DNA from: Paramoeba atlantica
Lineage: Eukaryota; Protista; Discosea
Assembly: GCA_977017575.1 (NCBI GenBank)
Contig: CDRNVI010000099.1
Span: 62,001-126,000, forward strand
Reading direction: 5' to 3'
Length of the DNA: 64,000 nt
Part shown: positions 8,460-48,361 of the stretch, in pieces
How the letters are laid out: each line of letters opens with the position of its first letter
How positions within the stretch are numbered: the stretch's first letter is position 1
Position numbers and translations under genes: made by a program
Notes under the pieces: generated by a model
What the model saw: the letters and a program-made list of their open reading frames with translations, nothing else
What the model was told of the DNA's origin: nothing
The model's database searches: none

Positions 8460-8532
8460 GCTTCCCCCTCCTACCCCGGCCTTTGATAGACCTGCCCCAG
8501 GCTTGGGACTGGAAACTGCGGAGTTAAGAAGC
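8460..8532 (-). ncRNA. Twister self-cleaving ribozyme (type P1 with P5 hairpin)
   Basis: GCUUCU-UAA-CUCC-GC-AGUUU-CCAG-UCCCAAGC-CUGG-[GGUC..GGCC]-GUAG-GAGGG-GGAAGC. P1, UAA, P2, P4, L4 UCCCAAGC, both pseudoknots and GAGGG are present; one P2 mismatch or bulge. Confidence 0.88.
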
Positions 8533-11453: not shown

Positions 11454-13515
11454 TCACGTGCGCAACGAAGGACGCAAGTTCTCTGCGGGCATCCGACTTA
11501 CCAGCATGCGCGCTTGGGCTCGCATTAGAGTCACATTCATTTCCGTGAGGAGGCGTTGGAAGGCCTTTCCTCTCGAAAGAGTGCCCTGCGAAGCGGCTGA
11601 GCGACGCTCGGCGACCTCACGGAGAATGGCCTGCGCGCTGTCGGACCACGATCCGAAGGATTCCACTGCCATAGCGGTGAATCTGTACCCTTGGGATTCA
11701 GCCTCGAGGCGCTCCGTTTGTGCTCCGTAGCGTACCGCTCGGCAAAGGATCCCGCTTTCCACACGTTAGCACCTCGGACTCAGTCCGTATAATATACCTA
11801 TGTGTTCTATGAACACTTCTTTTTTTAATTGAACACATAGAACGCATTGAACACTTTCTGGGGAGGTACACATCCCACGAACATGTTGATTATTTTTCAT
11901 AAACCTTCTTTGTTTTGCGCATATCCAAGTGATTACACATGCCCGAGCATACATATACCCGAGCATACATATACTATATGTATGTGGGTTACTGAACGTG
12001 GGTAACGCAGAAGCCCAATACCAAGCCGGTAGCTAGGCCAAAGTTCGGGAGGAATACGTCTCCTGGTCGGGTGGAGCCACCGCCAGGGCCGTAGGCTAAC
12101 CTCTCGTTATGGGGCGAAGTGCGCCTTGGTACACACGTCGTAGAAATGGTCGACCAGGGCGTTGTGCCGAGAAAATAGACCGTAGCCACTTTTGCAAGCT
12201 AGGGCGTGCCTGCCATCTGGTTCGGCCTAGCGGTTGGCTACACTTGTCCATAGGGCAAGGGCGGGGGGCATTGTGGACGTCTGCCCCGAGCCACCAACGG
12301 GCCAGGGCGCGGAACACCGTAGGGATAAGGGCGTACCCCAGCTCTTTGGATGGGAGAGCAAAGGCCCAGTTTGCGGCCCCATCCCCACTTTGAGAAAGCC
12401 ATCTTTCTTTAGTTGGTGTTTTCTTTAGTTGGTCTTTAGGTGGTGTTGGATTTGCCGGGGGGACTCAGGATCCTCTGGTAAGAGGTACCCTGTATGGACG
12501 TTGATGAGGGGTCTTCCGGATAGTTCGTTTACGTGGGTCATTGCCTCCCGGAATCCTTCTGCATCCAGTGCATCCCATCCGTCTTGGCTGGCTGCGAAGG
12601 AGACTGAGGAAGCGTACGCCGCTGAGTAGAAAAGAGAAGAGGAAGTCCAAAACCGCCATATTTTTTTCTTCGCTGAGCGCTGAGCGCATCCGGAAGGATC
12701 GAGTGAGCAAAGTGCGTCCTCTAAAGCTTGTAGCACCGCGGTGTCGAGACGCAAACATAGATCTAATAGGGGTTTAGGGGCTGTGGTGCGGAGGGAGAAG
12801 ACGAGCTGACAAAAGCCAGAGCACTGGCGGATGAGGGTTAACGCCACTTGGGGATCGAGGATATTCTTTATAGCGCTAAGTGTGGACAATGCTGGGGCCA
12901 AGGCGTGTTCGCGGAGGTAATCACTACAGTATTGCGCGGATCCCACCTGGCTGCCTAGGATGCTGAAATTGCCATCGAAGAGAATTCTTTGTTATGGGAT
13001 CTCAGGGAATAAAGTCACGAGGTGTGCGGACGGGGGGTGTAGGGTCACTTCACACTTCTGAGTGTTAAGAAGGAGTCCGAGCTGTCGACTTTCCCGCTCA
13101 ATGACTTCGAGGGCTTGCTTGACGAGCGCCGCCTTGCCGGCAAGTACCCCGTCGTCAAGGTACCAGACATGGAGGAAAAGTTCTTCAGGAAACTCAGCGT
13201 TAATAAATAAAAAAAATAAATAAAAATTTGCGCGAGATGATGGATTACCAGGGAGAAAAGGAGCGGTCCCAAGGGATCGACTTGTTGAACGCCTTCTGCG
13301 GAGTGCAGAATGTGTTGCCCAAAGGTGACGTAGCTGTCCGTTTCGTAACACCATTCTACCCATTTAGAGAGGGGGTTAGGAAAGTGCTTCTGAGTCAAGG
13401 AGGGAAAGGCGGATCTTGAGACGTCATTAAACGCGTTTGAGAGATCAATTTTGCACAGGACGAAATCTGGGTCGTCAGCATGCTTGGTCACCGTCTGACG
13501 ACAGAGATGAATCAT
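11454..13515 (-). mobile_element. Degenerate CRE/SLACS-clade non-LTR retrotransposon
   Basis: KIDLSNAFN, GVQQVDPLGPLLF, WYLDDG, LGLLLNTQKCE, RPGDVFLP, MAVESFGSW across several frameshifts. Confidence 0.88.
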
Positions 13516-13696
13516 GCGTTCGGCGCCAGCGGCGGTGGCGACACCATACTCTCCCTCTCATTAATTTTTATAAATTATAAATTATAACAAAAAATGAGAT
13601 ATACCGTGGAAACATTAATTAAGAATTACACTAATTAAGGGAAAATGGTTTTCAAAAAAACTTATTCCCTTAATTAGTGTTCCCTTATTTTATGTA

Positions 13697-13923
13697 GAAG
13701 GAGGTCAAGGAGGCCTTCAGAAACCTCCTAATCCACTACGGGTTTAATCCAAAGGTTCTCATCCAAACTATGGATCTACCAACACGCCGTCCTATCCAAA
13801 TTGCGCTTTCATTCGTTGTTCATGCCAGCCTTACTCATTCATTGAGAGGCTACAAAAGAGAACCACCCACCATATCAAGAAGTGGATGAACTTTGCCTCT
13901 GCCACCAGTATTGAAACCTTATA
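13697..13923 (+). mobile_element. Third copy of the mosaic junction fragment
   Basis: gaaggaggtcaaggaggccttcagaaacc..aaactatggatctaccaacac..; truncated by a Tc1 TIR at 13924. Confidence 0.88.
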
Positions 13924-14083: not shown

Positions 14084-14177
14084 CTGTCCCCCCCGTTTAA
14101 GCGCACCTCGTTTTCCGTGAAAAGTGCGCTTAAACGGGGGGGGTCTGACCGTGTGCGCTTAAGGGGAGGGAGGACAG
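14084..14177. mobile_element. Minimal palindromic MITE (TA|CTGTCC..GGACAG|TA)
   Basis: ccccgtttaagcgcac/gtgcgcttaaacgggg inverted repeat. Confidence 0.65.
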
Positions 14178-14787: not shown

Positions 14788-16391
14788 TATAAGCTGAAGA
14801 CATACGTCTACGGGGTAAAAAGAATCCCAGAGAGTGAAGCGGATGATGAAGGAGATGATGGGGATAATGAGGGGAATGATAAAGGGGATGGAGGGTATGA
14901 CGAAGGGAACGTTGATGGGGATGATGAAGGGGACGCTGGTGGAGACATTGAAGCTAACGAGCTCCGAATCCTGCTTTCCAATTTCTTCCGTAGAACTCTA
15001 CGATCCCAACATTACATACTCCCATCATATCCCATCATTGTTCATAATCCCATCATTGTTTACCAATAAAAAACACGAGCTTTCTTTGATTGAAATTCAT
15101 AGTCAAGGTCCCGCTTCATCACAAAACGTTTTTCAAAATGTATGAAGTACCGTACTATCCGTACTAGGGAGATGTATGGGTATACTAAATTTTGTCTAAA
15201 AAGCAAAAAATAATTTATAATTATATTTAATTTATCAGTAGTTGCTAGAAAAATGTTGCCTTGACCTTAAAATGCGATTTCTTGCCGTGTGATGACTAGA
15301 AAGTGGATCTGTCGCTTCTAAAAAAGGGATGTCTCCCGCTCCTGTTGCTGGGAGGGGGGGGTAGGTATACTAAGTGGGCACGGGTATACTATCCTGGAAC
15401 ATAGTTTAGTATTAAACAAGTTTAGATAGTAGATTTTTTTACAAATTCTTTTGATTACGATTTCTCTTTCCATGACCTTTCCACCGTACGGTCGAACTGG
15501 TACGTGGCTCCGGGCTTTGGACCGGTATAGCAGGCTTAAAGGAGACCGAGGTTACCGAAAGGAAGTGGATGTTGTCACGGGGGGTATTACAGTCCATGCT
15601 GTGCATTCATCGTCAGTTAGCCCCTAGGACACACTTCATTTGCCTCGGCCTGCTATTCTCGTGAATATGAAAGTCCCGATCCAGCCACTAGTTGTTTTTC
15701 CAACGGCGGCCACTGCGCCTCCCCCCCACTAAGAAACGCGGAAAACCGGAATTATGGGATGATCATGGCGATAATGAAGGGTAAAATGAAGGGGATGGCG
15801 AAGGCGATAGTGATAGTACGGTATACAGTGGTTAATGGAAGGCCCTCGCGAAGGGCAATCCAGGTTCCTTATTGTTCTCGAAGTGGGATCGACGTTTGAC
15901 TAATAAACTATAAATGATGCAACCCACCACTTTAATTGGAATAACACTCGAACATGGACTAGGCGTTCATTGCGGCATGGGAAGGCCACTGAGCTTCGAG
16001 TCCGTGGTATTCCTATTTCAGAGAGGCAATTATTGGGACGATGGCGGTCTCACTCGTCAGAACAATCGAATGTCACAGCCTACTAGCGCCAACCACGGGA
16101 GTCCAACTCCCCGTAAATAGCCAGCATGTGACATCCAATCATTGGCAATGTCACATTGTCACATAGGCAATGTCACCGCCGACTTGCCACAACCCAAGGG
16201 AGGCCAATTCCCCATAACTAACCAGCATGTGACATCCAATGTTACTGCCTACCAGCGGGAACATGAGAGTGTTGCGGTACTTCACCATGCCTAACTGCCC
16301 TGCAGCATGCCAAGTCCAGCTCTATACGGTTCGAATGTCATCAGCAAGACTGACACATCCAATTCAAGGCGTACAACTCGATCGAATGATC

Positions 16392-16464
16392 GCTTCCCCC
16401 TCCTACCCCGGTCTTTGAGAGACCTGCCCCAGGCTTGGGACTGGAAATTGCGGAGTTAAGAAGC
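16392..16464 (-). ncRNA. Twister ribozyme, second copy
   Basis: Core identical to 8460-8532; differences only in loop or P5 positions (GGUC/GACC perfect stem; AAUUU vs AGUUU). Confidence 0.88.
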
Positions 16465-16648: not shown

Positions 16649-17545
16649 TCAATGATCCCATACATTTATCTGTGTGTTATATACGCACAAACCGAACTCT
16701 TGCATATCTTCAGCAAATGGCGATCTTGTTATGTTGCCACACAAGTCCACATTATCTGATAAGTCCAAAGTCATCAAGAAAGATGGAAGGTTCGTCAAGT
16801 CCACATCACCAGAAAACTTATTCTGCGACAAATCAAGTCGAAAAATACTTGCAGGAAGTTGCTGCAGATCGAGTTCGCCGGACAGCTGATTTCCAGAGAT
16901 ATATACTCGCGATATGTTAGGCGGAAGCAAAGTCAAATCAAGTGGCCCGGTAAGACAATTTTCGCTAATGTTAACACTTTGCATACTATCCGGCAGACTC
17001 GTCAAACACACAGTTCCATTGAACCTGTTGTGATTTAACGCCAAATCTTCGAAACAGAGCGGAAGGGAAGTCAAGTCCAACTCGCCTTCAAACCGATTTA
17101 CGTACAGAGCTAGCGATCGCAGTTCCGAAGGCAAGCGCGTGAGCGGCACTGTGCCTTCTAGCGCGTTCCCAGGCACAGCAAAATCGTACAGACTATGTGG
17201 GAGATGAACCAAGTTCATAGTACCTGACAAATCTAGTTGACCCCATTCCACGCAGCTGACTTCTTCCCGCTCGTTACAACTCACACCTTTCCACTCGCAC
17301 GCTGGCGTGTGAAGACTCCACGATTCGTCCAAGTTGTTGACTTCCGCGAGGAGACGAACGAGTAGATACTCCTGAGGTAAATTCGCAGCGCTCACTTTAG
17401 CAATACGCGATCTCGTCTTTGTAGTTTCTTCAGCAGAATGAGTGTTGAAAGGCATTGGGCTTTCGACTTTACGTCGTTTAGTCGACGGTTCCTGAATATC
17501 CGAACATGTGAGCTGCACGATCGTGCGTAGGGTTATGCGCAGCAT
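16649..17545 (-). CDS. LRR family protein with KRRKV motif (298 aa), paralog B
   Basis: Colinear with paralog A, intact frame. Confidence 0.92.
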   Translation of the reverse strand: MLRITLRTIVQLTCSDIQEPSTKRRKVESPMPFNTHSAEETTKTRSRIAKVSAANLPQEYLLVRLLAEVNNLDESWSLHTPACEWKGVSCNEREEVSCVEWGQLDLSGTMNLVHLPHSLYDFAVPGNALEGTVPLTRLPSELRSLALYVNRFEGELDLTSLPLCFEDLALNHNRFNGTVCLTSLPDSMQSVNISENCLTGPLDLTLLPPNISRVYISGNQLSGELDLQQLPASIFRLDLSQNKFSGDVDLTNLPSFLMTLDLSDNVDLCGNITRSPFAEDMQEFGLCVYNTQINVWDH

Positions 17546-19601: not shown

Positions 19602-20492
19602 TCATTTTAACCGAATCTGCGTATTATAAATGCACAAATCGAACTGTCGCACACGGACAGGCACTTGTGACCTTGTTGTATTACTACACAAGTTCCAATT
19701 ATTCGATAAATTCAAAGTCATCAATGAAGATGGAAGTTTCGCCAATTCCACATCACCAGAAAACGTATTGCGCGACAAATCAAGTTGCGAAATCTTTGAA
19801 GGAAGTTGCCGAAGATCGAGTTCGCCGGACAATTGATTTCCAGAGAGGCGTACTTGCCATATGTTAGGCGGAAGCAACGTCAAATCAAGTGGCCCGGTAA
19901 GACGATTTTCGCTAAGGTTCACATTTTGCATATTGACCGGCAGACTCGTCAAACATACAGTTCCATTGAATCTGTTGCTATGCAAAGTTAAATCTTCGAA
20001 GCAGTAAGGAAGAGAAGTCAAGTCCAACTCGCCTGCAAACCGATTTTCGTACAGAGCTAGTGATCGAAGTTCCGAAGGCAAGCACGTGAGCGGCACTGTC
20101 CCTTCTAGCGCGTTCCCAGGCGCATCAAAATAGTTCAGACTATGTGGGAGATGAACCAAGTTCATAGTGCCTGACAAATCTAGTACGGACCATCTCACGT
20201 GGCTGACTTCTTCCCGCTCCTTACAACTCACACCTTTCCACTCGCATGCTGGCATGTGAAGACTCCACGATTCGTCCAAGTTGTGGACTTCCGCGAGGAG
20301 ACGAACGAGTTGATACTCCTGAGGTAAATTCGCAGCGCTCACTTTGGCAATACACGATCTCGTCTTTGTAGTTTCTTCAGCAGAATGAGTGTTGAAAGGT
20401 ATTGGGCTTTCGACTTTACGTCGTTTAGTCGACGGTTCCTGAATATCCGAACATGTGAGCCGCACGATCGTGCGTAGGGTTAAGCGCAGCAT
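19602..20492 (-). CDS. LRR family protein with KRRKV motif (296 aa), paralog C
   Basis: Colinear with paralogs A and B, intact frame. Confidence 0.92.
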   Translation of the reverse strand: MLRLTLRTIVRLTCSDIQEPSTKRRKVESPIPFNTHSAEETTKTRSCIAKVSAANLPQEYQLVRLLAEVHNLDESWSLHMPACEWKGVSCKEREEVSHVRWSVLDLSGTMNLVHLPHSLNYFDAPGNALEGTVPLTCLPSELRSLALYENRFAGELDLTSLPYCFEDLTLHSNRFNGTVCLTSLPVNMQNVNLSENRLTGPLDLTLLPPNIWQVRLSGNQLSGELDLRQLPSKISQLDLSRNTFSGDVELAKLPSSLMTLNLSNNWNLCSNTTRSQVPVRVRQFDLCIYNTQIRLK

Positions 20493-21309: not shown

Positions 21310-21794
21310 AGCAGCTAAATGAACAATTTAAACATTGCTCGCTAATCTATTCATTTTATAGTGTTGGTCTAGATACAATCTAGATTGTCGTTAGTCTACT
21401 GGAACAGTAGCGGAGGTATGCCTCCGTGATGTTGGCCTTTAAACCGAGACACCCGCTAGAAGACATGCCAATTGGTGCAAAAAAATGCACAGTGACTGGA
21501 AGGAAGTAATAGGAACAGTGGAGCACAAGGAAGAATATCTTGCTATAAAAGATAAAATGTATGATCATGTAGACAAGATGAAACGTTAACATCTGAGAGA
21601 ATCAGGGTATTAATATTGTCATAACGCATCCAACACTCAAGGTGTGACACACAAGGACCGGAAGAACGAGTTGACGATGCGTGCGAATTATTTAAAGAAT
21701 ACCACGTATTAATTTTACCGTATTGGACACATGTTGTACAACTTCCTAACTTTTTATCAGAGCTTGATTCTCCGCCTTGATGTGGCGCTCTGAC

Positions 21795-22350
21795 TTAACA
21801 CCCCTTTCGAGCATAACGCCGAGTGCATGCAGGCCAAGGCCAAATGTGTCCTGCAAGGCCTACCTCAAGGCCAGTCGGCTAAAGATCAGCGACGCAACCT
21901 TTGCGAGGCGGCCCTAGGGAAAGCCCCGCCCACCACGCAACTGGTCTGCATGCGGCAGATTCAGAACGTTCATTCCACAAAGTGGATGAACGCGTGGCCC
22001 AACTGGCCAGAGTACTACATGCGGGACCCGCAGTGGGAGACTGCGGCCCGTCTCCGGTACTTGGTCGCCCGTACCTCGGAGCCTGAGCTCCAGTGCGTGT
22101 GCGGTGCAACCTCCCGCAATGAGGAGTTTTGCGGACACGCACTGGATTGCAAGAAGGTTAAGGGGAAAACCCAGGCCTCCCGCCACAAGGAGGTCAAGGA
22201 GGCCTTCAGAAACCTCCTAATCCACTACGGGTTTAATCCAAAGGTAGGTTTAATCCAAAGGTTCTCATCCAAACTATGGATCTACCAACACGCCGTCCTA
22301 TCCAAATTGCGCTTTCAATCGTTGTTCATGCCAGCCTTACTCATTCATTG
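21795..22350 (+). mobile_element. Partial duplicate of the mosaic retroelement junction region
   Basis: Near-identical to ~24257-24812 (MQAKAKCVLQG..KLWIYQH). Confidence 0.9.
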
Positions 22351-22391
22351 AGAATATCATTCATTTTTGGAGGGCTCTATGCGCAAACTGA

Positions 22392-22586
22392 GTGTGTTGT
22401 TCTACCTGCACAGGATTCCCTGTACAAGGAACAACACACCATTATCTCGGCGTAGTAAACACGCCTTTGCTTGCCTGGCACAGTGATTGCCGGAAAATAA
22501 TATTTTTTTTTCCGGTTCATTTCACTGCCCAAGCTGCTTCCCACTTAAGGGGCTTGTCCCCACAACTGAGTGATCTCCCCGGCAAC
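22392..22586 (+). ncRNA. Conserved structured RNA motif, copy A (upstream of RT ORF)
   Basis: 11-bp stem GUGUGUUGUUC/GAACAACACAC, then CAUUAUCUCGGCGUAGUAAACACGCC and further hairpins shared with 46585-46706 and 48119-48319. Confidence 0.65.
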
Positions 22587-22623
22587 GTAGTATTACCTAC
22601 ATGTGTCAAGGAGGCAGAGAAGT

Positions 22624-22952
22624 GGGAGTCACGAATGACCTCGGAGGCAGATGACTACCTCCGGAGCGTGCACCCTCGGGACACGGAGTCTACAAGAAGA
22701 CCTCGAATACCATACCAAACATGATTCAGAACACATGCCCGAGGGGAGGGAGTCACGAATGACCTCGGAGGCAGATGACTACCTCCGGAGCGTGCACCCT
22801 CGGGACACGGAGTCTTCGAAGACCTCGAATACCATACCAAACATGATTCAGAACACATGCCCGAGGGGAGGGAGTCACGAATGACCTCGGAGGCAGATGA
22901 CTACCTCCGGAGCGTGCACCCTCGGGACACGGAGTCTTCGAAGACCTCGAAT
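22624..22952 (+). repeat. Tandem repeat, 2.7 x 122-124 bp, in retroelement 5' region
   Basis: gggagtcacgaatgacc starts at 22624, 22748, 22870. Confidence 0.95.
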
Positions 22953-25356
22953 TTGATTATTAATAGAGGGCTGCGCAGTATGTCGTGGACCGGTATCTAG
23001 CGTGTTTATGGAGCTGTGATAATGTACGGTATTCAATGTCCCGCATGGAGAGAGTACGTGCTAAGTGTATGCCACGACTTCCTAGGGAAATCTGAACAGG
23101 GAAGATAGAGACGGCTTGGAATCTCCTTCTAGCTGTTAAGCGCTTCCTTTTCTTCCCGGAGGACAAGCTATCGCAAAGACAGCTTGCACGCGAACTACGC
23201 ATGCGAGCTCACCTTGAGGGCTCAGAAACCTCGGCCCCGACCACCCCCAACCCGGCCAACGGCTCCCCTATGTCGGCGGTCAAACGCGCGACGGAACTGA
23301 TTAGAGCAGAAGCTTTCTCGAGAGCCGCCAAAATTCTGGAGGCACCGCTCGACCCACCGGCCAATCCCGCGGCAGCCCTTGCACAAGCCAAACGACTTCA
23401 TCCTTCTGAGGGACCCTACACCACGGGGAAATATCTCTACGATAAGGACCGACACGGGTCCCTGCCTTCCCTTGCGGATGTAGCTAGAAAGGCCCAAAGC
23501 CTGGCACCGCTTCGCGCCCCAGGCCCGACAGGGTGGACTAAAGAACTCGTAACCCCAGTTCTAATGGACAACGGTCCACGTGACACAGTCACGTGGACCA
23601 TACATGGAATACTAACCAACTCTCTCCGTCCCTCGATGCGCGAGCTGCTTACGGGGGCATCGTTGAAACTATTTACCAAGCCGGGCGCCCCAGCTGGACA
23701 TCACTCCTCGTACCGCCCCATAGCGATGGGGGAATGCCTTCTGAAGGTCGCCGGTCTTCTGGCCCTGGAGAAAGTGAGAGAACACCTCCCCACATTCTTC
23801 CAAGGACTCCAGTTCGGAGCACAATACACCCAAGGGTGTGAACATATTATACACAGTGTCCGAAAGCACTTCCGGGACAGGCCCGATGAAATCATAGTGG
23901 CTGCGGACCTGGAAAATGCTTTCAATATCTCGCGGTCTGTCATCTTCCGGGCCCTGGAGGGGGACCCGAAGCTACTCCCTCTGGAGGGTATCACCCTCTT
24001 TAGCTACGGGAAGGCTAGCTCTCTTCACTTGGGGGAAGGTACATCTATTATAAGTTCCAGAGGGGTTAAGCAAGGTGATCCTATGGCTCCTATCCTATTC
24101 GCCATAGGGATACACGGGGCCATAGCCAAAGTGGCTGCTAAATTCCCTGGAACCCTCAAAGTCTGGGCGTCTCTGGATAATGTTACCTTTGCAGGGGAGC
24201 CCAAGGTGTGCGGGGCGGCCCTGGAGGCAATGCAAGGGGAGATTAAGTCACTAGGGCTTAACATCCCTTTTGAGCATAAGGCCGAGGGCATGCAGGCCAA
24301 GGCCAAATGTGTCCTGCAAGGCCTACCTCAAGGCCAGTCGACTAAAGATCAGCGTCGCTCCCTCTGCGAGGCGGCCCTACTGAAAGGCCCATCCACCACG
24401 CAACTGGTCTGCATGCGGCAGATTCAGAACGTTCATTCCACAAAGTGGATGAATGCGTGGCCCAACCGGCCGGAGTACTACATGTGGGACCCGCAGTGGG
24501 AGACTACGGCCCGTCTCCGGTACTTGGTCGCCCGTACCTCGGAGCCTGAGCTCCAGTGCGTGTGCGGTGCAACCCTCCGCAACGAGGAGTTTTGCGTACA
24601 CGCACTGGATTGTAAGAAGGTTAAGGGGAAAACCCAGGCCTCCCGCCACAAGGAGGTCAAGGAGGCCTTCAGAAACCTCCTAATCCACTACGCGTCTAAT
24701 CCAAAGGTAGGTTTAATCCAAAGGTTCTCATCCAAACTATGGATCTACCAACATGCCGTCCTATCCGAATTGCGCTTTCAATTCGTTGTTCATGCTAGCC
24801 TTACTCATTCAGTGAGAGGCTACAAAAGAGAGCCACCCACCATATCAAGAAGTGGATGAACTTTGCCTCTGCCACCAGTACTGAAAGCTTATATACCTCA
24901 CGCGGATGGAATCTTACAAGCGCATCGCAATTATGGCACCTTTGGACCGGGGAAGCTCTTTGCCATATGCAAAGTTCTTGTGACCCGAATGTGCTACAAT
25001 CCCTCCGCTCCCGAATAGAGGAAGAGAAGAATGTACCCCGCCGAGGCTTGATAAGACCAGCAACTTATACTCTTGATGATCTTGCAGATTTCAACCGAGT
25101 CAAGGACATCCTACGCAAACAGTATGAAACGAACACGTTACAGAAACTGAAAAAACGGGCCCCAATAAGTTCAAAATGGTGGGTCCTACCGGTTGATCCT
25201 GACACAGCTAAACATTTTGCGGCAGCGATAAACGGAATAAAGAACTATAAGCTTTCCCGATTTGCAGCATCGATTATGACCCTGACACCTCTCCCCTCCT
25301 GCGCCGCTCTCCGCAGATGGGGAATATCATCACACTCAAATACGACGTGCCCCATA

Positions 25357-26883
25357 CAGGGGTGCGGGTCTAAAGGTGGGGGGGTCTAAAATTCGTAAAA
25401 GTTGTCCAATTTTGGAAAATAATAGCGCATTGGATAGCTCTCACAGAGTTGTATGTTTTAGGCGCATTAAAACCCTGTGATTTTTTTTGATACCACATTT
25501 CGCTTTTTTCCCTCGCAGGAATTACATTTTTTACTAGAAAATGCCCCAAATGCGCGCTCGCTCGAGGACTTCCCGTGGAGTACTGAGCGATAGATCGTAT
25601 TCTTCCCCCGCCCCCGTCAAAGAGAGTCACCGCATGCTTTTGGTGGCGGAATACGAGCGCACAGGATCGTACTCCGCTACGGCGCAGCACTTTGGTGTTC
25701 ATGAGAACACTGTAAAACGTTGGGTTGAACGTTTTACCCTTACGGGTGACGTGTTAACGGCATCCCGAGAGCGTGTCTCGACGGTGGTTACCCCTGCGTT
25801 CCTGGATGTGGCTCTCAAGCTTGTCGACGAGGGGTATCGCGACCTTGTTTACGGCGTAGAGAGCTGGAGCGATCTTCTGCGAGAGATCCGTAGCCAAGGA
25901 TTCACCTGCAGTCGACGGACCCTAGTCGACACATTGAAGAAGCAAGGCGTTGTGCTCCGCACTCTTCGGCGACGACCATCACTCACACTCGAACACAAGG
26001 AGAAACGGTTGCAATTTTGTAAGGCGATGCTCGAGAAGAGCGACGCTCAACTCCTTCATTTTGTTTATTGTGACGAAAAGAAGTTTACTTGCGGTCGTGG
26101 GCGTTCCGGGCGAACTTACCTTTGTCGGAGGACGGACCCCCATAAGGAACAACGAGGCGAGCTAGAATCATGGTACGGCGGAAATGGGATTATGGTTTGG
26201 ATGGGTGTGAGCCTCAAACACGGCTTCCATCTCCACATTTTCCCTCCTCGAAATTCAGAAGGCCAGAAACTCACCGTTACGGGTGAAATTTTTGATCAGG
26301 CTATGAAAAAGCCACGGGGCTTCCTTCAATATTTAAAGCGACATCCAGCGGCCATTATTGCCATGGACAACTGCCCGGCCCACAACAAGGCGCGTGCCAC
26401 GTTCCGTGATACAGGAATTTCCGTTCTCCCCTGGCCTGCAAAATCTCCAGACCTGAATCCGATCGAAAATTTGTGGTCTGTGATGGACACAGACAAAAAT
26501 CTTCTTCGACCCCGAAATCGACAGCAACTGGAAGCCGCCATTGAGGGGTCTTTCCTTAAATTGAAACAGACCCACTCTGCAACGGTTCAGAAAACGTTGA
26601 AGAGTTTCAGGAAGCGTTGTGAAATTGTTATTAGTCGGAACGGGGGGCACTGTGGTTACTAATTGTCTTTTGCAATCCAAATTACAGAAATTATTGACAT
26701 CACTAAAGTATTGCAATATGTGTTTTTGACCCTTACATGAAAGGGGGGTACCCCCCAAACCCCGGATGCTACCTATCCTAAAACATACAACTCTGTGAGA
26801 GCTATCCAATGCGCTATTATTTTCCAAAATTGGACAACTTTTACGAATTTTAGACCCCCCCCACCTTTAGATTCGCACCCCAG
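25357..26883 (+). mobile_element. Complete Tc1/IS630-family transposon with ~105-bp TIRs, at TA
   Basis: TA|CAGGGGTGCG left end; inverted copy at ~26778-26883 with altered last bases; splits the host retroelement in its CPI|CS zinc knuckle. Confidence 0.92.
25541..26662 (+). CDS. Tc1-like transposase, DD32E (373 aa)
   Basis: N-terminal HTH (TVKRWVERF), CDEKKF, MDNCPAH, WPAKSPDLNPIENLW; intact frame. Confidence 0.93.
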   Translation: MPQMRARSRTSRGVLSDRSYSSPAPVKESHRMLLVAEYERTGSYSATAQHFGVHENTVKRWVERFTLTGDVLTASRERVSTVVTPAFLDVALKLVDEGYRDLVYGVESWSDLLREIRSQGFTCSRRTLVDTLKKQGVVLRTLRRRPSLTLEHKEKRLQFCKAMLEKSDAQLLHFVYCDEKKFTCGRGRSGRTYLCRRTDPHKEQRGELESWYGGNGIMVWMGVSLKHGFHLHIFPPRNSEGQKLTVTGEIFDQAMKKPRGFLQYLKRHPAAIIAMDNCPAHNKARATFRDTGISVLPWPAKSPDLNPIENLWSVMDTDKNLLRPRNRQQLEAAIEGSFLKLKQTHSATVQKTLKSFRKRCEIVISRNGGHCGY

Positions 26884-27817
26884 ATGTTCTAGAGAAATAC
26901 AAACACCGCGTCACGTCCTCTCCTCCTCTACCGTATCCTTGGAACAAGGACGATACTCCTATCGACATAATCTGCTGCTTCAAGAGCTCGCGACTCATCT
27001 CCTAAAGTTTCCGTACACTTCGAAAGCCAACTTTGACATTCCGGGACTGCGCAACCCCCCGGACTGGATGGTAAACGATCTATCATTGTTGCGGCCAGAT
27101 GGCTGGGTGCAACTCAAGAATGTATGCGAATACATTATCGATTTTTTTTGTCATCCCCCGAGCCCATTAGCGCACGCCCCTACAGTACCATTTTTGTACC
27201 AGAGTCCCGGGGCCGGGGACACCGTACGTGGTGAGGACCAAAGGGAAAAAATATTAATTATCGAACTCACAATACCTTGGGAAGAGAACCTCGCTGAGGC
27301 GCATCGGCGCAAACGAAACAAATACAGCCAGTTAATGTTCAAGCGTCGTGCAGAAAAAGTACCCTGCTGTTCGATAGTTTTTGAAATAGGAGCGTGTTTA
27401 ATGCCTAACACGACCTCCTCACGAGTCAGTGTCCCATTCCATGGGGAAGAAGAGGCATCTTCCTGTGTACAGCACATGATCCGAAGTGCAATCTTCGGGA
27501 GTTATGTGATCTGGACGCGGCGCGAGGACCCCGCATGGTCCGATGAACCACGCGAAGAATGATTAGACTTTCGGTAGACACGTTGTATGCGTGCTAACCG
27601 AATTAAATTCTCTTCCGGCTCGCCCGGTATGAAACGGAAATGGAGGTAGGCGTCCTACGCTCCCATTCATCCAACCTCTGCCCGCTGCGTGGGTGCATAC
27701 AGGGCTGTAAAGAAGGACGAAAAGTTTGCACAAGCGCTATTTGATTTGCGAATAACCAATGACCGTATCGAATGTGAGACCCCCTTTAGCGTATCAAATG
27801 CGCGTGATATAAATTTA

Positions 27818-28925: not shown

Positions 28926-29666
28926 TTAGTTAATAAGAACAATATTCGTACTCAGGAGACGAAACGGGTTATCAATTACGTGCTGCGGAAGTTCTGACCT
29001 CTTTACTTCAGCACATAACGCTTCGTTACATCTTACGTCCAGGCAGAACAGCGATCGGGGAAGGTGCATGAAATCAATCAGCCCTGAAAAGAGGTTGTGG
29101 TGGAGAGACAAGATCTGCATGCCGTGCGGAAGTGCGTTCAACTCAAGACCTCCGGTAAGAGAATTATGGCAAAGATCCAGTTTCTCAATTTCCACTGGAA
29201 GCTCACTTAAACAGATATTTCCAACGAACTTGTTTTTCCCCATATCCACCTGCCTCATGCTCGGGGGTAGAGCCGGCAGATCCAGACTTGCACTAAACAA
29301 ATTATTCCACACACTTATGTCTGAAAGGGTAGGGGGAAGATGACCCAATGTTACCTCACCCTTTAACCCCTGATGAGATACGAAAAACTTGGTAACCGAG
29401 TCCGGAAGATGGATCACGTCGAGCGAACCGCTCAGTGGAGGTGAATAACCAAAGGGGTTCGCACTCCAGGAAATCTCACGAACACGCTGGTCCACACAAG
29501 TGACCCCGTGCCAGTTACATGCGTGGATTTGTGCACTCCATGACGGACGCGGGTTCGAGATGTTCTGAATGAGTTTTGCGAGTTGATATTCCTGTGGTAG
29601 AACCCCCGCGGTGACTCTACCGAGACGTGTCGTTGAGGTGTCGGCGAGATGAACGTTGGGAAACAT
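28926..29666 (-). CDS. LRR family protein (246 aa)
   Basis: RLGRVTAGVLPQEYQL, CNWHGVTC, LRRs; strong polypyrimidine tract directly upstream of ATG. Confidence 0.9.
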   Translation of the reverse strand: MFPNVHLADTSTTRLGRVTAGVLPQEYQLAKLIQNISNPRPSWSAQIHACNWHGVTCVDQRVREISWSANPFGYSPPLSGSLDVIHLPDSVTKFFVSHQGLKGEVTLGHLPPTLSDISVWNNLFSASLDLPALPPSMRQVDMGKNKFVGNICLSELPVEIEKLDLCHNSLTGGLELNALPHGMQILSLHHNLFSGLIDFMHLPRSLFCLDVRCNEALCAEVKRSELPQHVIDNPFRLLSTNIVLIN

Positions 29667-33446: not shown

Positions 33447-36400
33447 TACAGGGCATTACCTGTAGAGTAATAAAGTCTAACAGGACGTACGCATATGACG
33501 TCGCCTGCTAGACCATTTGCTAACCAAAGCTTTGGTTGTCCCATAAAGGGGATTCCCTTTTCAGCCAGAGTTGAAAGCTGCTCCGGATCGCCGTTCGGAT
33601 GACTTCGACACGGCACTTATCTGAGAGTGCCTTGTCACCCAAAAAGAGACGGTTGATGTGACGCAGCGTCGTAGAAGGGAGACCTCTAGCTCCAACTTCA
33701 AAGCATATCAAGTGGCAGTCTGAGTACCTTATTTTCGTCGGTGTAGAATATTTATGTACTTTTCTACTTTTCGGCAGTGGGCTTCGTGTACGTTTTCCTC
33801 CCAGGGCATCGTCAACTCAACGATAAATTCAGTTCCGTCGTTGAGTTTGACGATTCCATCTGGGCGAAGCTGTGTTTCCAGGTCGGACCACCATGCGGGT
33901 AGTTGACGTAGGTGTGGGAGATCAAAATGTGCCTCTGCGGTATGGGGGGAAGAGAGTATCGCGTTTGCAAAGGTGGAGAGTACACAATCATGGCGATATG
34001 TGTAACGTCCCTGTTCTAGTGATACCTTGCACGAGGATAAGAGGTGTCGTAATGTTTCCGGTTCTTGTTTACAAATTCGGCATTGTACTGTATCTGTGCC
34101 GTGAATTCCCCATGTCCTCAGCATTGTCCTAGTAGGGAGAGTGTTTTGTACCATTAAAGAAGTTGCGAAGCGGCTAAGGGAAGTGCTACGTAGTCCGTTT
34201 ATCGCGGCGCTGAAATCTTTCGCCTGTTCTTCCTCGGAGGCTATATCCCACCACTGAATAGCGAACGTTGACCTGCGGCGTAGTGCGTTGATCATTCGGT
34301 CCTCATTAAGCTCAAGAAGAGTTCGTTTTGCGAGGTCGCGATCCTCCAGTATGTGTGTGATGTCACATGCTGGTCGAATTTGGCCTTTCCTGCGCTTATG
34401 TTCTTCAGCCCGTATTCTTTCCTGCAGTGCGGCGGTAACGTTCGGGTCTCGGGACCGCTTCATTTGACAGAGAAGATCAGCTGTACAGTCCTCCCAGAGT
34501 CTGGACAAGCTGCAGATGTTCCATCCACGCTGAGAGTAGATTGCTTCGCTGCATGTAGTTCTAGCCGCATTGATCCACCGTTTCAGGGAGTGAGTACACA
34601 TTTTCTGAAGGCGTAAAATAAAGTTGAGCGTGATACATGGGTGTATAGTAAAGGTGAAGCGTAGCCGAGAGATGATTGCGTGTTGATATATCCAAATTTT
34701 TGATGGGAGGTCGTCGGCCGACTGCTCCAAGGAGGAGGCGTGGTCACGCGAAATAATCTCGTATGGTGGAAGTGTTGGGACCGTTTGGGGCTTTGATGGC
34801 TGTACTTCTTCTTTGTCGTCGGTGCGAAGGAGCAGAACGATCCGAAACGCCGATAACCCAGGGACCGCTCTCCCGTTCAGTACCTTGTTTACCGCTTTAC
34901 CCATTGAGCTAGGTGATGCGTAGTGGTTGTATAATTCCAGGCGGCTGTCGTGAAAAAGAGAAACCCAGTTCGCGTGGCGGGAAATGTGACTTGTTGAGTC
35001 TACTCTACTAACTTCTAAAAAAGTCACACGCTCTCTTTTCCATAAGTTCGTCTACGGTACACGTTTCTACGACGATGTCGTGTGCTGCACTTTTCCCATT
35101 GAGCGCTTTGGACAGGGCGGCTTCAGCCCCCTGGGGGGAAGGGATACGACTACGCACAAGTTGGCTTACGCATGCTGCATGCACATCCGGGAAATATCTC
35201 CATGTGTTGTCGTTGACGAGGCGGAGTTTGACAGGTTTTGACCGGGACTGGATAAAGTGGAAACGTTGCTTGTGTCGGTTATGGGTTACGGGATGCGTGG
35301 GGTCCTGGGGCGGCGGGAGATACTGTGACGGGCTGTAGGGAGTTTGTGTGGGAATCTGGGGACCCTCGGATTCATCCGAATGTAAATGGGTGTCCAGTTG
35401 TGATGGGGGTAAGAGGCTTCCTTGTTCAAGCGGCGGGCTTTGTATTCGCCCTACGCTGTGCGCTTGTTGGAAAACCCAGGATGGGACTTCGTCATCGCCA
35501 TTCTCATTCCGCGGACTGTGTTGGTGTGCTGGGGAAGATGAGTCCAAGAGAATGATACTTTCCGGTGCCTTGTTTTTGGGAGTCGGGATGGCTGGTTCCC
35601 TGGCAACGGCACGGTCAGCTGTCGTAGTGGTTGTGTTTAGGGACCGTGTGACGAGATTCTTGAGAAGGGTACATGGGCCGGTGGGTAGAGTATCCTGCCC
35701 ATCCAGTTTGCTTATCGGTGTGTCAAGCGAAGTCAACGGTGTGCCAGTGCGTTTGCAGCAAGGATGGCCGCACCCTGCCTTGTTCTTACATTTATGCTTA
35801 CAGGGCTCAACACGGTCTGCTTGTTCGGAGGCGGGGCCTAGGCCTTGCTTGCAGCACACGTGCTTACATTGATCTTTACTCTTGCAGATATGCTTGCATA
35901 CTCTAGTTAAGGCGTGGACCTGAAGTTGTGTTGGAGATTTAGGTTTGGGGAGGCTTTGGGAGTCCGGAGTTTGACATGGAACGCCGTTGAAAAGTAGGAA
36001 TTTGGCAAGCGAGCAGGCAGTTGATGCGACGGCACGACCGACGGTAACAGTGGGTGATTTTTGATGGGGAGTAACCTCCTTGGGTGGGGGTACATGTAAA
36101 TCGTGTTCGTCTTTTGGACAGGGTGCTATTGTGTACGACAAGCGTTCCTGTCCGGTGCTGCTGTGAGGTCGTACGGTTACCGCCGGGGTTGAGGGAGTGC
36201 CGTTAGCGTACGGTTGAGTGCGGCTTGAAAACAGATATCGTGTTGCAGCTCGCGCTGCCATGCCAAGTAGGTTGCTTGATTTCGGTACTTTCACATCCTG
36301 TGTTACGTGGTCACGGGTGCATGGCGGTGACGTTTCGTCCCTTTGTCGCGTACTTGGAGCTTCTTTGGGCCCGGATTCTTGGCCGCTCGCCGTAGTGCTC

Positions 36401-41151: not shown

Positions 41152-41171
41152 GAAGTCAAAATATAAAAGGA

Positions 41172-42788: not shown

Positions 42789-43000
42789 AACGAGGAGGTA
42801 ATCAACGTGAAGGGAACATTGTGAAGGTGCTGTTTTGTGTGATTTTTCGTGAGAACTTCAAACAAAACAGTACCTCCACAATGTTCCCTTCACGTTGAAG
42901 ATTACCTCCTCGTTCTATGAAGGCCGATGAAGAAGGAAGAAGAAATCGCACAGTTCTCAACCACGGATTGCCAATTCGGCTACAACCAATTTCAAGCTCA
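42703..43000. repeat. ~300-bp near-perfect palindrome (foldback)
   Basis: ~140-bp arms, short central loop; left arm also present at ~41328-41413. Confidence 0.93.
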
Positions 43001-45077: not shown

Positions 45078-45160
45078 CTTCATTATCACTCCTTCGTAAA
45101 CACGCTTGTTACCGGTCCCAAGCCCGGCACCGCCATATTCGGCGGAGTGTGAGGGTGAAG
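45078..45160 (+). ncRNA. Twister ribozyme, distinct family
   Basis: CUUCA-UUAU-CACUCC..GCUU..CCGG-UCCCAAGC-CCGG-[CGCC AUAUUC GGCG]-GAGUG-U-GAGGG-UGAAG; 4-bp GCUU/AAGC pseudoknot; L1 is UUAU rather than canonical UAA. Confidence 0.8.
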
Positions 45161-45318
45161 ATTTCAATACATCTATAGCACGATTATAAACTAAATATAA
45201 TTGAACTACTTGTTTCTAGTATCCAGTAGAACTACTACATTTAGCTCCATTTACCTAAACAATCTTACACGCCTGAAAATGTCACGCATCAATTCGCTTG
45301 GTCCCGGCCTGGCAGTAC

Positions 45319-46566
45319 TTCATCCTCTGTAACGAGGCCCATGGGCTCCGTACCCTTCGGGTATCACCGCCCCAGCATTCGTGCTGCGAGGCCCATGGGC
45401 TCCGTGTCCTTCGGGGCACACTTGCCGTTGCATTTATATATTCATCCTCTGTAACGAGGCCCATGGGCTCCGCACCCTTCGGGGTACCACCGCCCCAGCA
45501 TTCGTGCTGGGAGGCCCATGGGCTCCGTGTCCTTCGGGGCACACTTGCCGTTGCATTTATATATTCATCCTCTGTAACGAGGCCCATGGGCTCCGCACCC
45601 TTCGGGGTACCACCGCCCCAGCATTCGTGCTGGGAGGCCCATGGGCTCCGTGTCCTTCGGGACACACTTGCCGTTGCATTTATATATTCATCCTCTGTAA
45701 CGAGGCCCATGGGCTCCGTACCCTTCGGGGTACCACCGCCCCAGCATTCGTGTTGGGAGGCCCATGGGCTCCGTGTCCTTCGGGACACACTTGCCGTTGC
45801 ATTTATATATTCATCCTCTGTAACGAGGCCCATGGGCTCCGTACCCTTCGGGGTACCACCGCCCCAGCATTCGTGTTGGGAGGCCCATGGGCTCCGTGTC
45901 CTTCGGGACACACTTGCCGTTGCATTTATATATTCATCCTCTGTAACGAGGCCCATGGGCTCCGTACCCTTCGGGGTACCACCGCCCCAGCATTCGTGTT
46001 GGGAGGCCCATGGGCTCCGTGTCCTTCGGGACACACTTGCCGTTGCATTTATATATTCATCCTCTGTAACGAGGCCCATGGGCTCCGTACCCTTCGGGGT
46101 ACCACCGCCCCAGCATTCGTGTTGGGAGGCCCATGGGCTCCGTGTCCTTCGGGACACACTTGCCGTTGCATTTATATATTCATCCTCTGTAACGAGGCCC
46201 ATGGGCTCCGTACTCTTCGGGGTACCACCGCCCCAGCATTCGTGCTGGGAGGCCCATGGGCTCCGTGTCCTTCGGGACACACTTGCCGTTGCATTTATTC
46301 CTCTGTAACGAGGCCCATGGGCTCCGTACCCTTCGGGGTACCACCGCCCCAGCATTCGTGTTGGGAGGCCCATGGGCTCCGTGTCCTTCGGGACACACTT
46401 GCCGTTGCATTTATATATTCATCCTCTGTAACGAGGCCCATGGGCTCCGTACTCTTCGGGGTACCACCGCCCCAGCATTCGTGCTGGGAGGCCCATGGGC
46501 TCCGTGTCCTTCGGGACACACTTGCCGTTGCATTTATTCCTCTGTAACGAGGCCCATGGGCTCCGT
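45319..46566 (+). repeat. Tandem array, 10 full units plus a partial unit, ~123 bp, three TTCG-loop hairpins per unit
   Basis: Unit starts at 45319, 45441, 45564, 45687, 45810, 45933, 46056, 46179, ~46295, 46418, ~46534; two units carry a 7-bp deletion. Confidence 0.97.
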
Positions 46567-46584
46567 CACTCCTACGAAGGAGTG

Positions 46585-46706
46585 ATAATGAGGGGGTTGC
46601 TATGCCCTGTCCATGGTATCATGTTCAGGGGAACAGCAACTCCCCATTATCTCGGCGTAGTAAACACGCCTTGGCTTGCCTGGCACTACGATTGCCGAAA
46701 AAAAAA
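46585..46706 (+). ncRNA. Conserved structured RNA motif, copy B (3'-truncated at an A-run)
   Basis: AUAAUGAGGGGGUUGCU/AGCAACUCCCCAUUAU stem plus conserved core. Confidence 0.6.
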
Positions 46707-46767
46707 CTTAGTTCCTTAATCCTCACTTGAGGCATGGTAACGGGAGTCCTCCCCCCTAAGAAGATTT

Positions 46768-47030
46768 GAAGTTGAAAAATATGGAGTGTTCGGGGGAGAG
46801 AAAACAAAGGGGGAGACTATTGTTGGTGCGTTATAGATCCCCCCATATGGAAGTATCGAGGCACACCGGACGTCTCGGGTTGACGCTCGAAATACGAATA
46901 TGAAGTTGAAAAATATGGAGTGTTCGGGGGAGAGAAAACAAAGGGGGGGAGTATTGTTGGTGCGTTATAGATCCCCCCATACGGAAGTATCGAGGCACAC
47001 ACCGGACGTCTCGGGTTGACGCTCGGAATA
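46768..47030 (+). repeat. Two ~133-bp direct repeats
   Basis: gaagttgaaaaatatggagtgttcggggg.. occurs twice. Confidence 0.9.
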
Positions 47031-47209
47031 CGGCTTTTCAGGGTATCTCGCCTAGTAGGAATATTGAATCAGAAATTCAGACCGACGATAGTGAACGCGT
47101 TAGTGCTTATTCGGTGGAGAAAAAAAAGAAAACTAGAAAAAAAAAGCAAACGGTTGCTTTGCTTGATGCATTTATACCCGATTTCTTTGTTAACGAAGAT
47201 TCATCATAA

Positions 47210-47875
47210 ATGCTGAAGGAACAACTTGGATTCTTTACATCAACACACCTAAAACATGGTTTACCATGGGGTATCAAATGTTGCACGGCATTGAAAAGTA
47301 CCCAAAATTTTATTGAATGGATAAATTGTCCCCCTTTTCACGGGAAAATAAGGAAACTATCCTCCGGGGTTTGGTTACAACATTTATTAGAACTCGTGGA
47401 ATGCGGGGTGCTACGTGTGGCACACGACTCTCGATCATCATCACGTTTATATTTACGTTACTTTGAGGCATCAAAAGGGGAGGAATTGTCAAGAAGTATT
47501 GCGGATGGAACACCACTAAATGAGATGTGCAATCGCCCTCCTGGCTTGAATTTTCCAGCTATTGCTGAAATTATCCATGTAATAGAGAATTTCCCCAACG
47601 TAAACTTTTTATCCGCTGATATGCGACACTGGTTTCACCAGAGTGAAATACCATCAGAATCGGGGCGTACATCAGTTAGGAGATCGATGTGTAATGAGAT
47701 CACGGAAATGGATGAACAGATAGGGAAACATGGACATTCTTTTCGAATTTTCCATATTAAATCTAAAGAAAACCCAGCGGACGGGTTGACTCGAGAAGGG
47801 CATAATTATGACATAAAAGAAGCACTCCTGAACTCAGCTCTAAGAGCTGGCGATGTACATGTAGACCCTATGTAA
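47210..47875 (+). mobile_element. DIRS/VIPER/TATE-like RT plus RNase H remnant, internally deleted
   Basis: RSIADGTPLNEMC..PP....P..ADMRHWFHQ (RT), joined to HIKSKENPADGLTR (RNase H end). Confidence 0.72.
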
Positions 47876-48118
47876 GAATTATAGAAAGCGTAACTGGAGG
47901 AAACAAACACACGAATCTAGAGTAATTAGTAAAATTTATGAGTGGATAGCATGAGGAATGGCAAAGAAAGTAAATCCCCCCCAAAAGAAAAAACGTTAAC
48001 CAAAGGTTTACGCCAACCCTTTGTTCTATTGCACTCAAAGTTTTCTACTCCATTATGCAGTAAAATTTCCTTCGTATTTCTTCTTCCGAAAATTTTCTCG
48101 ACGCATGAGTAAAACCGT

Positions 48119-48319
48119 GCTGCCGGGGAGATCACTCGGTTGTGGGAGCGGGCCCCTTAAGTGGGAAGCGACTGGGCTGCGAAATGAACCGAAAATATAT
48201 TTTTTTCGGCAATCGTAGTGCCAGGCAAGCCAAGGCGTGTTTACTACGCCGAGATAATGGGGAGTTGCTGTTCCCCTGAACATGATACCATGGACAGGGC
48301 ATAGCAACTCCCTCATTAT
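48119..48319 (-). ncRNA. Conserved structured RNA motif, copy C
   Basis: Near-identical to copy B at the 5' end and colinear with copy A at the 3' end. Confidence 0.65.
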
Positions 48320-48361
48320 TGCGACCCGACGGCTAGGTTAAACTAAGAAATGTTTGTCAGC

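What the first reader, a model, noticed from the sequence alone, without database searches (positions are those of the whole stretch)
22392..22586. Unassigned ~200-nt RNA motif in three copies with strong covariation
Copies are at 22392-22586 (+), 46585-46706 (+) and 48119-48319 (-). The first stem has different sequence but conserved pairing (GUGUGUUGUUC/GAACAACACAC vs GGG[A/G]GUUGCU/AGCAACUCCC). The CCGGAAAA/UUUUCCGG hairpin loses a G and its partner C together in copy C. Invariant parts include CAUUAUCUCGGCGUAGUAAACACGCC, GCUUGCCUGGCA, GCUUCCCACUUAAGGGG and GAGUGAUCUCCCCGGCA. Long-range pairs CUCGG/CYGAG and GCUUGCC/GGCARC are possible. It shares CAUUAUC, GUAAACACGC and GCUUG with the 45-kb twister, and copy A has GCCCAAGC, but I cannot fit it to twister, HDV, hammerhead or pistol. 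It lies upstream of an RT ORF at 22 kb, so it could be a new ribozyme, an IRES-like element or an RT-binding element.
Basis: partly seen in the sequence, partly recalled or inferred. Interest (0 to 1): 0.8.

Follow-up and report, generated by a model that had tools for sequence, protein, structure and literature searches.

The report
Terminal repeat of twister-capped retrotransposon
The three-copy "RNA motif" is real and folds, but it is the end-repeat (and its internal complementary copy) of a tyrosine-recombinase retrotransposon in a kinetoplastid-like protist; the element's other end is a twister ribozyme, a combination I found described in no paper.

Summary
The interpretation does not hold. 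The motif (M) does not belong to the RT ORF at 23 kb.

Related loci from the same genome (ENA ERZ24900291) show four elements with one architecture. In order: a twister ribozyme at the left terminus, ~122-nt tandem repeats, an inverted copy of the element's own first 18-60 nt, the first ~120 nt of M abutting it, then gag-like, tyrosine recombinase and RT/RNase H genes, then the full ~230-nt M inverted at the right end.

The partial M plus the inverted left terminus is the reverse complement of the joined ends. That matches the internal complementary region (ICR) of DIRS-type retrotransposons. B is such an ICR, and C is the right end of the same element.

A is the right end of a 634-nt internally deleted copy. 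That copy is inserted into the coding region of an unrelated non-LTR retrotransposon. Uninterrupted paralogs show the empty site.

M matches no Rfam family. Which strand folds is unresolved.

Verdict: a new variant of a known kind. The twister-YR-retrotransposon link is the interesting part.

The parts
22391..23024 (-). 634-nt internally deleted copy of the YR retrotransposon. On the minus strand it reads: left terminus, tandem repeats, right terminal region M. It is nested in a non-LTR element.
   Evidence: Both flanks align to uninterrupted paralogs L003/L004/L005 at AAACTG|TACG. The two flanks were compared separately.
22391..22625 (+). Copy A of motif M in its full form.
   Evidence: nhmmer 22384-22612; CM 127.9 bits; alignments.
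22624..22952 (.). About 122-nt tandem repeats (about 2.7 units), the same family as the repeats in L007.
22985..23024 (-). Left terminus of the deleted element. It starts CATTATC on the minus strand. The twister is truncated after its P4 5' strand.
22366..27562 (+). Remnant of a non-LTR retrotransposon with an RT ORF (RVT_1) and a C-terminal CCHC/PD..E..K-like region. It is broken: 5'-truncated relative to paralogs, two nested insertions, and at least one frame change.
21785..22353 (+). A second fragment of the same non-LTR family (RT C-terminal part), lying upstream of A.
45081..48320 (+). YR retrotransposon copy, internally deleted. The gag and YR genes are absent and RT/RNase H is reduced to one ORF.
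   Evidence: Same architecture as L007, L008 and L018.
45092..45160 (+). Twister ribozyme (P1, P2, P4 and P5 present, no P3). The predicted cut after U45097 removes the element's first 17 nt.
   Evidence: Rfam Twister-P5 22.5 bits. Helices were read. It aligns with the L008 twister, which scores 37.4 bits on twister-P1.
45236..46571 (.). 123-nt tandem repeats, about 11 units.
46573..46704 (+). Internal complementary region. It consists of 18 nt that are the exact reverse complement of the element's nt 1-18 (46573-46590), overlapping copy B (46585-46704), which is the first ~120 nt of M.
   Evidence: 18/18.
47210..47875 (+). Remnant RT/RNase H ORF (221 aa) of the YR element.
   Evidence: 59% amino-acid identity to the L007 internal region; aligns to the L008 RT ORF.
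48100..48320 (-). Copy C of M in its full form, inverted. It is the right terminal region of the element at 45081-48320.
   Evidence: It is 99% identical to B over the shared part.
25541..26662 (+). Transposase ORF of a Tc1/mariner-type DNA transposon nested in the non-LTR element. This is a neighbour, not part of the finding.
   Evidence: HTH_Tnp_Tc3_2 and DDE_3; 85-nt inverted repeats flank it.

Best explanation
M is the terminal-repeat system of a DIRS-type tyrosine-recombinase (YR) retrotransposon with VIPER-like gene order (gag-like, YR, RT/RNase H). The host is a kinetoplastid-like protist.

Shown:
- The full ~230-nt M sits inverted at the right end of each element.
- The first ~120 nt of M sit upstream of gag in sense orientation. 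They directly abut an inverted copy of the element's own left terminus.
- Together these two pieces are the reverse complement of right end joined to left end. That is what defines an internal complementary region (ICR).
- The left terminus is a twister ribozyme.
- Copy A belongs to a 634-nt deleted copy inserted into another retrotransposon.

Inferred mechanism:
1. The element is transcribed by read-through.
2. The twister cuts after nt 17-18 and sets the RNA 5' end.
3. The first-strand cDNA ends anneal side by side on the ICR. This restores the lost leader and closes a circle.
4. The YR integrates the circle at a short core, CA(G/T)T(T/A)T on the coding strand.

The conserved stems of M are selected as intramolecular structure of the terminal RNA or of the single-stranded cDNA. 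Stem H1 is the outermost hairpin, and its 3' end is base-paired in the sense RNA. It is a candidate self-primer for reverse transcription.
For: - Same architecture in four elements: window 45081-48320, L007, L008 and L018.
- The sequence abutting the partial M is the reverse complement of that element's own first nucleotides: 18/18, 51/56, 42/45 and 42/45. Each matches its own terminus best.
- Partial and full M are 94-99% identical within an element but 68-80% identical between elements. This is the signature of termini regenerated in each replication cycle.
- Empty-site evidence supports both termini of the A unit.
- YR gene: the R-K-H-R-H-Y columns are invariant or nearly so in 30 relatives. 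Eight of the 30 hit Phage_integrase. SAM-like and integrase domains give weak hits.
- RT gene: RVT_1 weak hit. Nine distant metagenome relatives were found.
- Twister: 37.4 bits, E 1.7e-4, with no non-canonical pair. The P5 helix has a different sequence in four elements.
- The CM and nhmmer find M only at these positions in 288 kb.
- The DIRS-1 ICR is defined and needed in exactly this sense (PMC7192593). The gag-YR-RT/RH order is that of VIPER/TATE (PMC6681497).
Against: - All elements come from one genome, and only four lineages of M exist.
- YR, RT and twister matches are all below the curated Pfam/Rfam thresholds.
- No transcript data are available, so the cleavage, the RNA ends and the strand that folds are all inferred.
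- Both strands of M fold equally well. G-U and A-C cells occur on both.
- The ICR lies near the left end, not next to the right repeat as in DIRS-1.
- Left and right ends share only the ~25-30-nt module.
- The A unit has no ICR.
- Three of the six left-end twisters are decayed: L007, L019 and the 22-kb unit.
Confidence: 0.8

Rival explanations
1. M is a free-standing structured RNA, possibly a new self-cleaving ribozyme or a twister variant. On this view it merely travels with mobile elements.
For: Strong compensatory variation in several stems. Wobble-only changes in the long-range helix of copy D favour the M+ strand. M shares CATTATC-N9-TAAACACGC, including the UAA-ACAC-GC stretch, with the twister.
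Against: No Rfam match at E<=5 on either strand. M lacks the twister P4 loop and GAGGG. The candidate P1/P2 partner strands are in the wrong order (read). Every one of the nine copies is an end or an ICR of a YR element. Homogenisation within each element is explained by terminal-repeat biology.
Confidence: 0.08
2. M is the 5' UTR (IRES or RT-binding element) of the non-LTR retrotransposon whose RT ORF starts at 23201.
For: Copy A lies 600 nt upstream of that ORF on the same strand.
Against: Paralogs have continuous coding sequence where the 634-nt unit sits. Five other copies of the family lack M. B, C and the L007/L008/L018 copies have no such RT downstream.
Confidence: 0.02
3. The pairing is a DNA-level property with no folded single strand. 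On this view M is a palindromic recombination or binding site for the tyrosine recombinase, or a plain inverted terminal repeat of a Crypton-like DNA element. The twister-repeat block would then be a separate foldback insertion.
For: Both strands fold equally well. H1 is a near-palindrome that scores on both strands. YR sites are typically inverted repeats around a short core (my own knowledge).
Against: The A unit ends exactly at the CATTATC terminus, so the twister block is part of the mobile unit. The elements carry RT/RNase H. Conserved G-U pairs and wobble-only changes are not expected for a duplex protein site. Stems D2 and D3 are not palindromic with respect to the core.
Confidence: 0.1

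Closest known systems
DIRS-1 and DIRS1-like YR retrotransposons (Dictyostelium and others)
   Same: They encode YR plus RT/RNase H. [quoted passage not shown] They lack a long target duplication, and a short core is shared by junction and target (PMC7192593, PMC6681497).
   Different: Gene order is gag-YR-RT/RH, not gag-RT/RH-YR. The ICR lies upstream of gag, ~1.5 kb from the left end, not beside the right repeat. The left end is a ribozyme rather than a promoter-bearing long repeat. Left and right ends share only ~25-30 nt. Tandem repeats sit in the leader.
VIPER / TATE of kinetoplastids
   Same: Host group and gene order gag-like, YR, RT/RH. The degree of decay and the nesting among other retroelements are also similar (PMC6681497, PMC5814959).
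   Different: VIPER and TATE are reported with split direct repeats (A1 ... B1 A2 B2). That paper mentions no ribozyme. Here the termini are inverted with an ICR, and a twister is present.
[quoted passage not shown]
   Same: A twister-type ribozyme at the 5' end of a retrotransposon, co-transcribed with it. The 5' strand of P1 lies upstream of the cut (PMC8501958).
   Different: Perere-3 is a non-LTR element, and its P1 5' strand is supplied by the target-site duplication. Here the lost leader has an exact complementary copy inside the element (the ICR).
L1Tc Pr77 / L1TcRz HDV-like ribozyme of trypanosomatid retroposons, and R2 HDV-like ribozymes
   Same: Ribozyme-defined 5' ends for retroelements in genomes with read-through or polycistronic transcription (PMC5814959).
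   Different: A different ribozyme class. HDV-like ribozymes cut at their own 5' edge, so nothing has to be restored.

Membership tests
DIRS-order (YR) retrotransposons | Encodes a tyrosine recombinase | tested here: met
   R156, K183, H250, R253, H254 and Y284 columns are invariant or >=90% conserved in 30 relatives. Eight of the 30 hit PF00589. The element's own protein scores below threshold (SAM_4 20.9 bits, Phage_integrase 16.3 bits).
DIRS-order (YR) retrotransposons | Encodes reverse transcriptase / RNase H | tested here: inconclusive
   RVT_1 23.8 bits against a cut-off of 29.6. No PDB sequence match. Nine distant relatives in metagenomes. RNase H was recognised only by reading, not by a tool.
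DIRS1-like subgroup | Inverted termini plus an ICR complementary to the start of the left end and the end of the right end | tested here: met
   in four elements. The position of the ICR differs from DIRS-1.
VIPER-like subgroup | Gene order gag-like, YR, RT/RH | tested here: met
   L008 and L007 ORF order.
VIPER-like subgroup | Split direct repeats A1 ... B1 A2 B2 | tested here: not met
   The repeats are inverted.
Twister ribozyme (Rfam CL00120), asked of motif M | P1-UAA-P2, P4 loop UCCCAAGCC, GAGGG, pseudoknots | tested here: not met
   No hit at E<=5. Only the UAA-ACAC-GC part is shared.
Twister ribozyme (Rfam CL00120), asked of the elements' left termini | Score at or above Rfam gathering; conserved nucleotides and helices | tested here: inconclusive
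   37.4 bits (L008) and 22.5 bits (window), against gathering scores of 67.2 and 37.6. All conserved nucleotides are present, along with P1, P2 and P4. P5 covaries. P3 is absent.
Twister ribozyme | Self-cleavage | not testable with these tools
   No transcript or biochemical data.
HDV-like, hammerhead, pistol, hatchet, other Rfam ribozymes (asked of M) | Match to the family covariance model | tested here: not met

The most novel reading that the evidence does not exclude
The full ~230-nt M is itself a functional folded nucleic acid and not merely a complementary end. It could be an undescribed ribozyme or 3'-end-forming RNA that makes the element ribozyme-bounded on both sides. Alternatively it could be the self-priming structure that starts reverse transcription in YR retrotransposons, a step whose primer is still unknown for DIRS-1 (PMC7192593).
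Probability: 0.15. Interest if true: 0.85.

Novelty: new variant of a known kind. Interest (0 to 1): 0.6.

Why it matters
Twister ribozymes are widespread in eukaryotes, but a confirmed role is known for only one non-LTR family. No ribozyme has been linked to tyrosine-recombinase retrotransposons in the papers I could search. Here the ribozyme's cut would remove the element's first 17-18 nt. The element also carries an internal exact complement of just those nucleotides next to a complement of its other end. This gives a concrete, sequence-level reading of how a DIRS-type ICR rebuilds ends, and of how such elements get defined RNA 5' ends in genomes with read-through transcription. It also gives clear termini for a VIPER-like family, which have been hard to define.

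Tried and rejected
- **Rfam.** Nothing at gathering threshold in the window. At E<=5 nothing matches M.
- **Collection scans.** An exact 26-mer scan of JGI metagenomes found 0 matches. A viral-contig scan with the RT alignment found 0.
- **Distant relatives.** The metagenome relatives of the RT (L009-L017) and L020 are short contigs. They have no M and no twister.
- **L019 and L021.** These are diverged or cut copies. L019 has a decayed twister and tandem repeats but no recognisable M.
- **PDB sequence searches.** Searches with the YR, the RT and the non-LTR C-terminal piece found nothing.
- **M as coding sequence.** A and C are open in the same frame. A protein search found one 'relative', which is simply copy D. 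Most differences change the amino acid, so I rejected coding.
- **M as a twister variant.** Rejected; see the membership test.
- **Strand assignment by folding energy.** Inconclusive.
Copy G does not keep it, and it competes with the invariant hairpin GGCGU/ACGCC. The other proposed pair, UUGCC.GG with CC.GGCAR, is kept through wobble changes.

Full report
**Observation.**
- A self-comparison gives A vs C 85% identity over 153 nt and B vs C 99% over 120 nt.
- B ends inside the A-rich hairpin.
- The first ~40 nt of A differ from B and C in sequence but keep a 10-11-bp stem.
- The module CATTATC-N9-TAAACACGC occurs five times in the window, against none expected.
- Rfam at gathering thresholds finds nothing in the window. 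With permissive settings it finds nothing for the motif. It finds a sub-threshold twister at 45 kb.

**Source.** The window is not human and not viral.
- Its RT protein has nine relatives, all from one ENA assembly, ERZ24900291. L001 is the same locus as the window.
- Genes in neighbouring contigs are intron-poor.
- A UDP-glucose pyrophosphorylase matches PDB entries 3gue and 2oef far better than any others. From my own knowledge these are the Trypanosoma brucei and Leishmania major enzymes.
- I take the host to be a kinetoplastid-like protist.

**More copies.** A spurious ORF across copy C found one database protein, which led to L007.
- A nucleotide profile of the motif, used only for searching, then found a second, partial, inverted copy in L007.
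- A search with the neighbouring ORF led to L008. The representative search with that protein led to L018. Each has one partial and one full copy.
- A covariance model of the first 129 positions finds exactly these nine copies in 288 kb. Apart from reverse-strand echoes of the palindromic first stem and one 17.5-bit, low-GC hit in L004 that I take as chance, it finds nothing else.

**Architecture.** All four elements read the same way on their coding strand:
1. a left terminus starting CATTATC that folds as a twister ribozyme;
2. a spacer;
3. tandem repeats of about 122 nt;
4. an inverted copy of the left terminus;
5. directly abutting it, the first ~120 nt of M;
6. the ORFs;
7. the full M (~230 nt) in inverted orientation at the right end.

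**Genes.**
- The recombinase's own Pfam hits are below threshold. In an alignment with 30 relatives from the 1.8-billion-protein library, however, the R-K-H-R-H-Y positions are invariant or nearly so. Eight relatives hit Phage_integrase.
- The gene order is that of VIPER/TATE of kinetoplastids (PMC6681497).

**State of the copies.**
- Window copy at 45-48 kb: no gag and no YR gene, and RT/RNase H reduced to one 221-aa ORF (at least one large internal deletion).
- L007: YR and RT/RNase H in several pieces.
- L008: gag-like and YR ORFs open, RT/RNase H in two frames (one frameshift).
- L018: one nested retroelement insertion.
- L019: one nested Tc1/mariner insertion.

**The motif is a terminal repeat plus an ICR.**
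- Within an element, partial and full M are 94-99% identical. Between elements they are 68-80% identical.
- The stretch abutting the partial M is the reverse complement of that element's own first nucleotides: 18/18 in the window, 51/56 in L007, and 42/45 in both L008 and L018. In each case it matches its own terminus best.
- Inverted left start followed by the complement of the right end is the reverse complement of right end joined to left end.
- That is the definition of the internal complementary region of DIRS-type elements. In DIRS-1 this region has been shown to be required (PMC7192593; background in PMC6681497).
- So copy B is an ICR, C is the right end of the same element, and their 99% identity follows.

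**Copy A and the RT ORF.** On the minus strand, the unit 22391-23024 reads left terminus (twister truncated), three repeats, then full M. It is an internally deleted copy of the same family.
- I compared its two flanks separately with paralogs of the surrounding non-LTR retrotransposon.
- L003, L004 and L005 run straight through AAACTG|TACG, where the window carries the 634-nt unit.
- The unit is therefore an insertion into that element's coding region, not its 5' UTR.
- The surrounding non-LTR copy is broken: 5'-truncated relative to paralogs, two nested insertions (this unit and a Tc1/mariner), and at least one frame change.
- The right ends of A, L008 and L018 begin AAACTGAG, whereas the ICRs have ATAATGAG.
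- In the A case AAACTG is present in the empty site. This suggests a 6-nt core shared by target and junction, which is an inference.

**Twister.**
- The L008 left terminus scores 37.4 bits on twister-P1 (E 1.7e-4) with no non-canonical pair. The window copy scores 22.5 bits on Twister-P5.
- By reading, both have P1, U|AA, P2 (ACAC/GUGU), GC, the P4 hairpin with the conserved loop, a P5 hairpin and GAGGG.
- P5 has four different sequences in four elements.
- Both scores are below the gathering thresholds. P3 is absent and P5 is an insertion relative to the models, so membership is probable but not proven.
- The predicted cut lies 17-18 nt inside the element. The window's ICR carries the exact complement of nt 1-18.

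**Structure of M.** On the four divergent full copies, RNAalifold gives 59 pairs in these parts:
- a long outer hairpin (H1);
- an invariant small hairpin;
- a long-range helix;
- two inner domains.

Counts:

| Measure | Observed | Slid-partner controls | Shuffles reaching observed |
|---|---|---|---|
| Pair cells forming standard pairs | 96.5% | 44-52% | 0/500 |
| Pairs changed on both sides | 11 | 0-2 | 0/500 |

- Templating from the ICR can explain why partial and full copies agree. It cannot explain complementarity between the two arms of a stem, so I infer selection for an intramolecular fold.
- Which strand folds is open. Both strands fold with z-scores between -2.7 and -7.7.
- In the sense RNA, the complement of H1 is a terminal hairpin with a paired 3' end. 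It could prime reverse transcription, as was suggested for a hairpin in DIRS-1 (PMC7192593). This is an inference.

**Comparison and novelty.**
- The closest known systems are DIRS-1 (ICR logic), VIPER/TATE (host and gene order), Perere-3 with its twister variants (PMC8501958), and L1Tc with its HDV-like ribozyme (PMC5814959).
- Full-text searches found no paper joining twister, or any ribozyme, to YR retrotransposons or to kinetoplastids.
- That library is incomplete, so this is absence in what I could search, not proof.

**Limits and declarations.**
- All evidence is from one genome, and there are no transcript data.
- I built one nucleotide profile HMM pair and one covariance model of the non-coding terminal motif, for searching only. 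I printed no consensus.
- A slip: while reasoning I recalled from memory short motif strings. These were the endonuclease region of R2, an LTR-type RT motif, an RNase H end and a twister fragment.
- The 'restriction-like endonuclease' label for the non-LTR element rests on my reading only, with no tool match.

Noticed in passing
window 8462-8530 (-) and 16394-16462 (-); partial 15510-15536 (-): Two further twister-P1-like ribozymes (29.7 and 30.7 bits, below gathering) with a covarying P4 stem (CCAG/CTGG). They lie about 340 nt downstream of LRR-family ORFs inside a repeated unit. No M or ICR is nearby.
   Followed up: partly
window 4628-6413, 8868-9764, 16649-17545, 19602-20492, 28926-29666, 40279-41247, 50824-51663, 60383-61387 (all -): A multi-copy family of ~220-330-aa ORFs with weak LRRNT_2/LRR hits. 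The window is a gene-family array riddled with mobile elements.
   Followed up: partly
window 25541-26662 (+); related arms near 39.7-40.1 kb and 58.9-59.0 kb: Tc1/mariner-type transposon (HTH_Tnp_Tc3_2 + DDE_3) with 85-nt inverted repeats, plus fragments of more copies. The same family is nested in L001, L006 and L019.
   Followed up: partly
window 33729-37026 (-): Two long ORFs of another retroelement (zf-RVT hit), unrelated to the finding.
   Followed up: no
window 13698-13923 (+) and 13073-13551 (-): Further fragments of the non-LTR RT family, one on each strand.
   Followed up: no
window 22624-22952 and 45236-46571; L007 14440-15050; L008 6838-7500; L019 5225-6100: The leader tandem repeats (61/122/123-nt units) differ in sequence between elements but always sit between the twister and the ICR. 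Their role is unknown.
   Followed up: partly
window 14086-14146: A long perfect hairpin (C-rich/G-rich arms) that draws chance-level microRNA model hits.
   Followed up: no
window 41169-41415 / 42544-42790 / 42900-43000: Direct and inverted repeats that are 97-99% identical, from another unexamined element.
   Followed up: no
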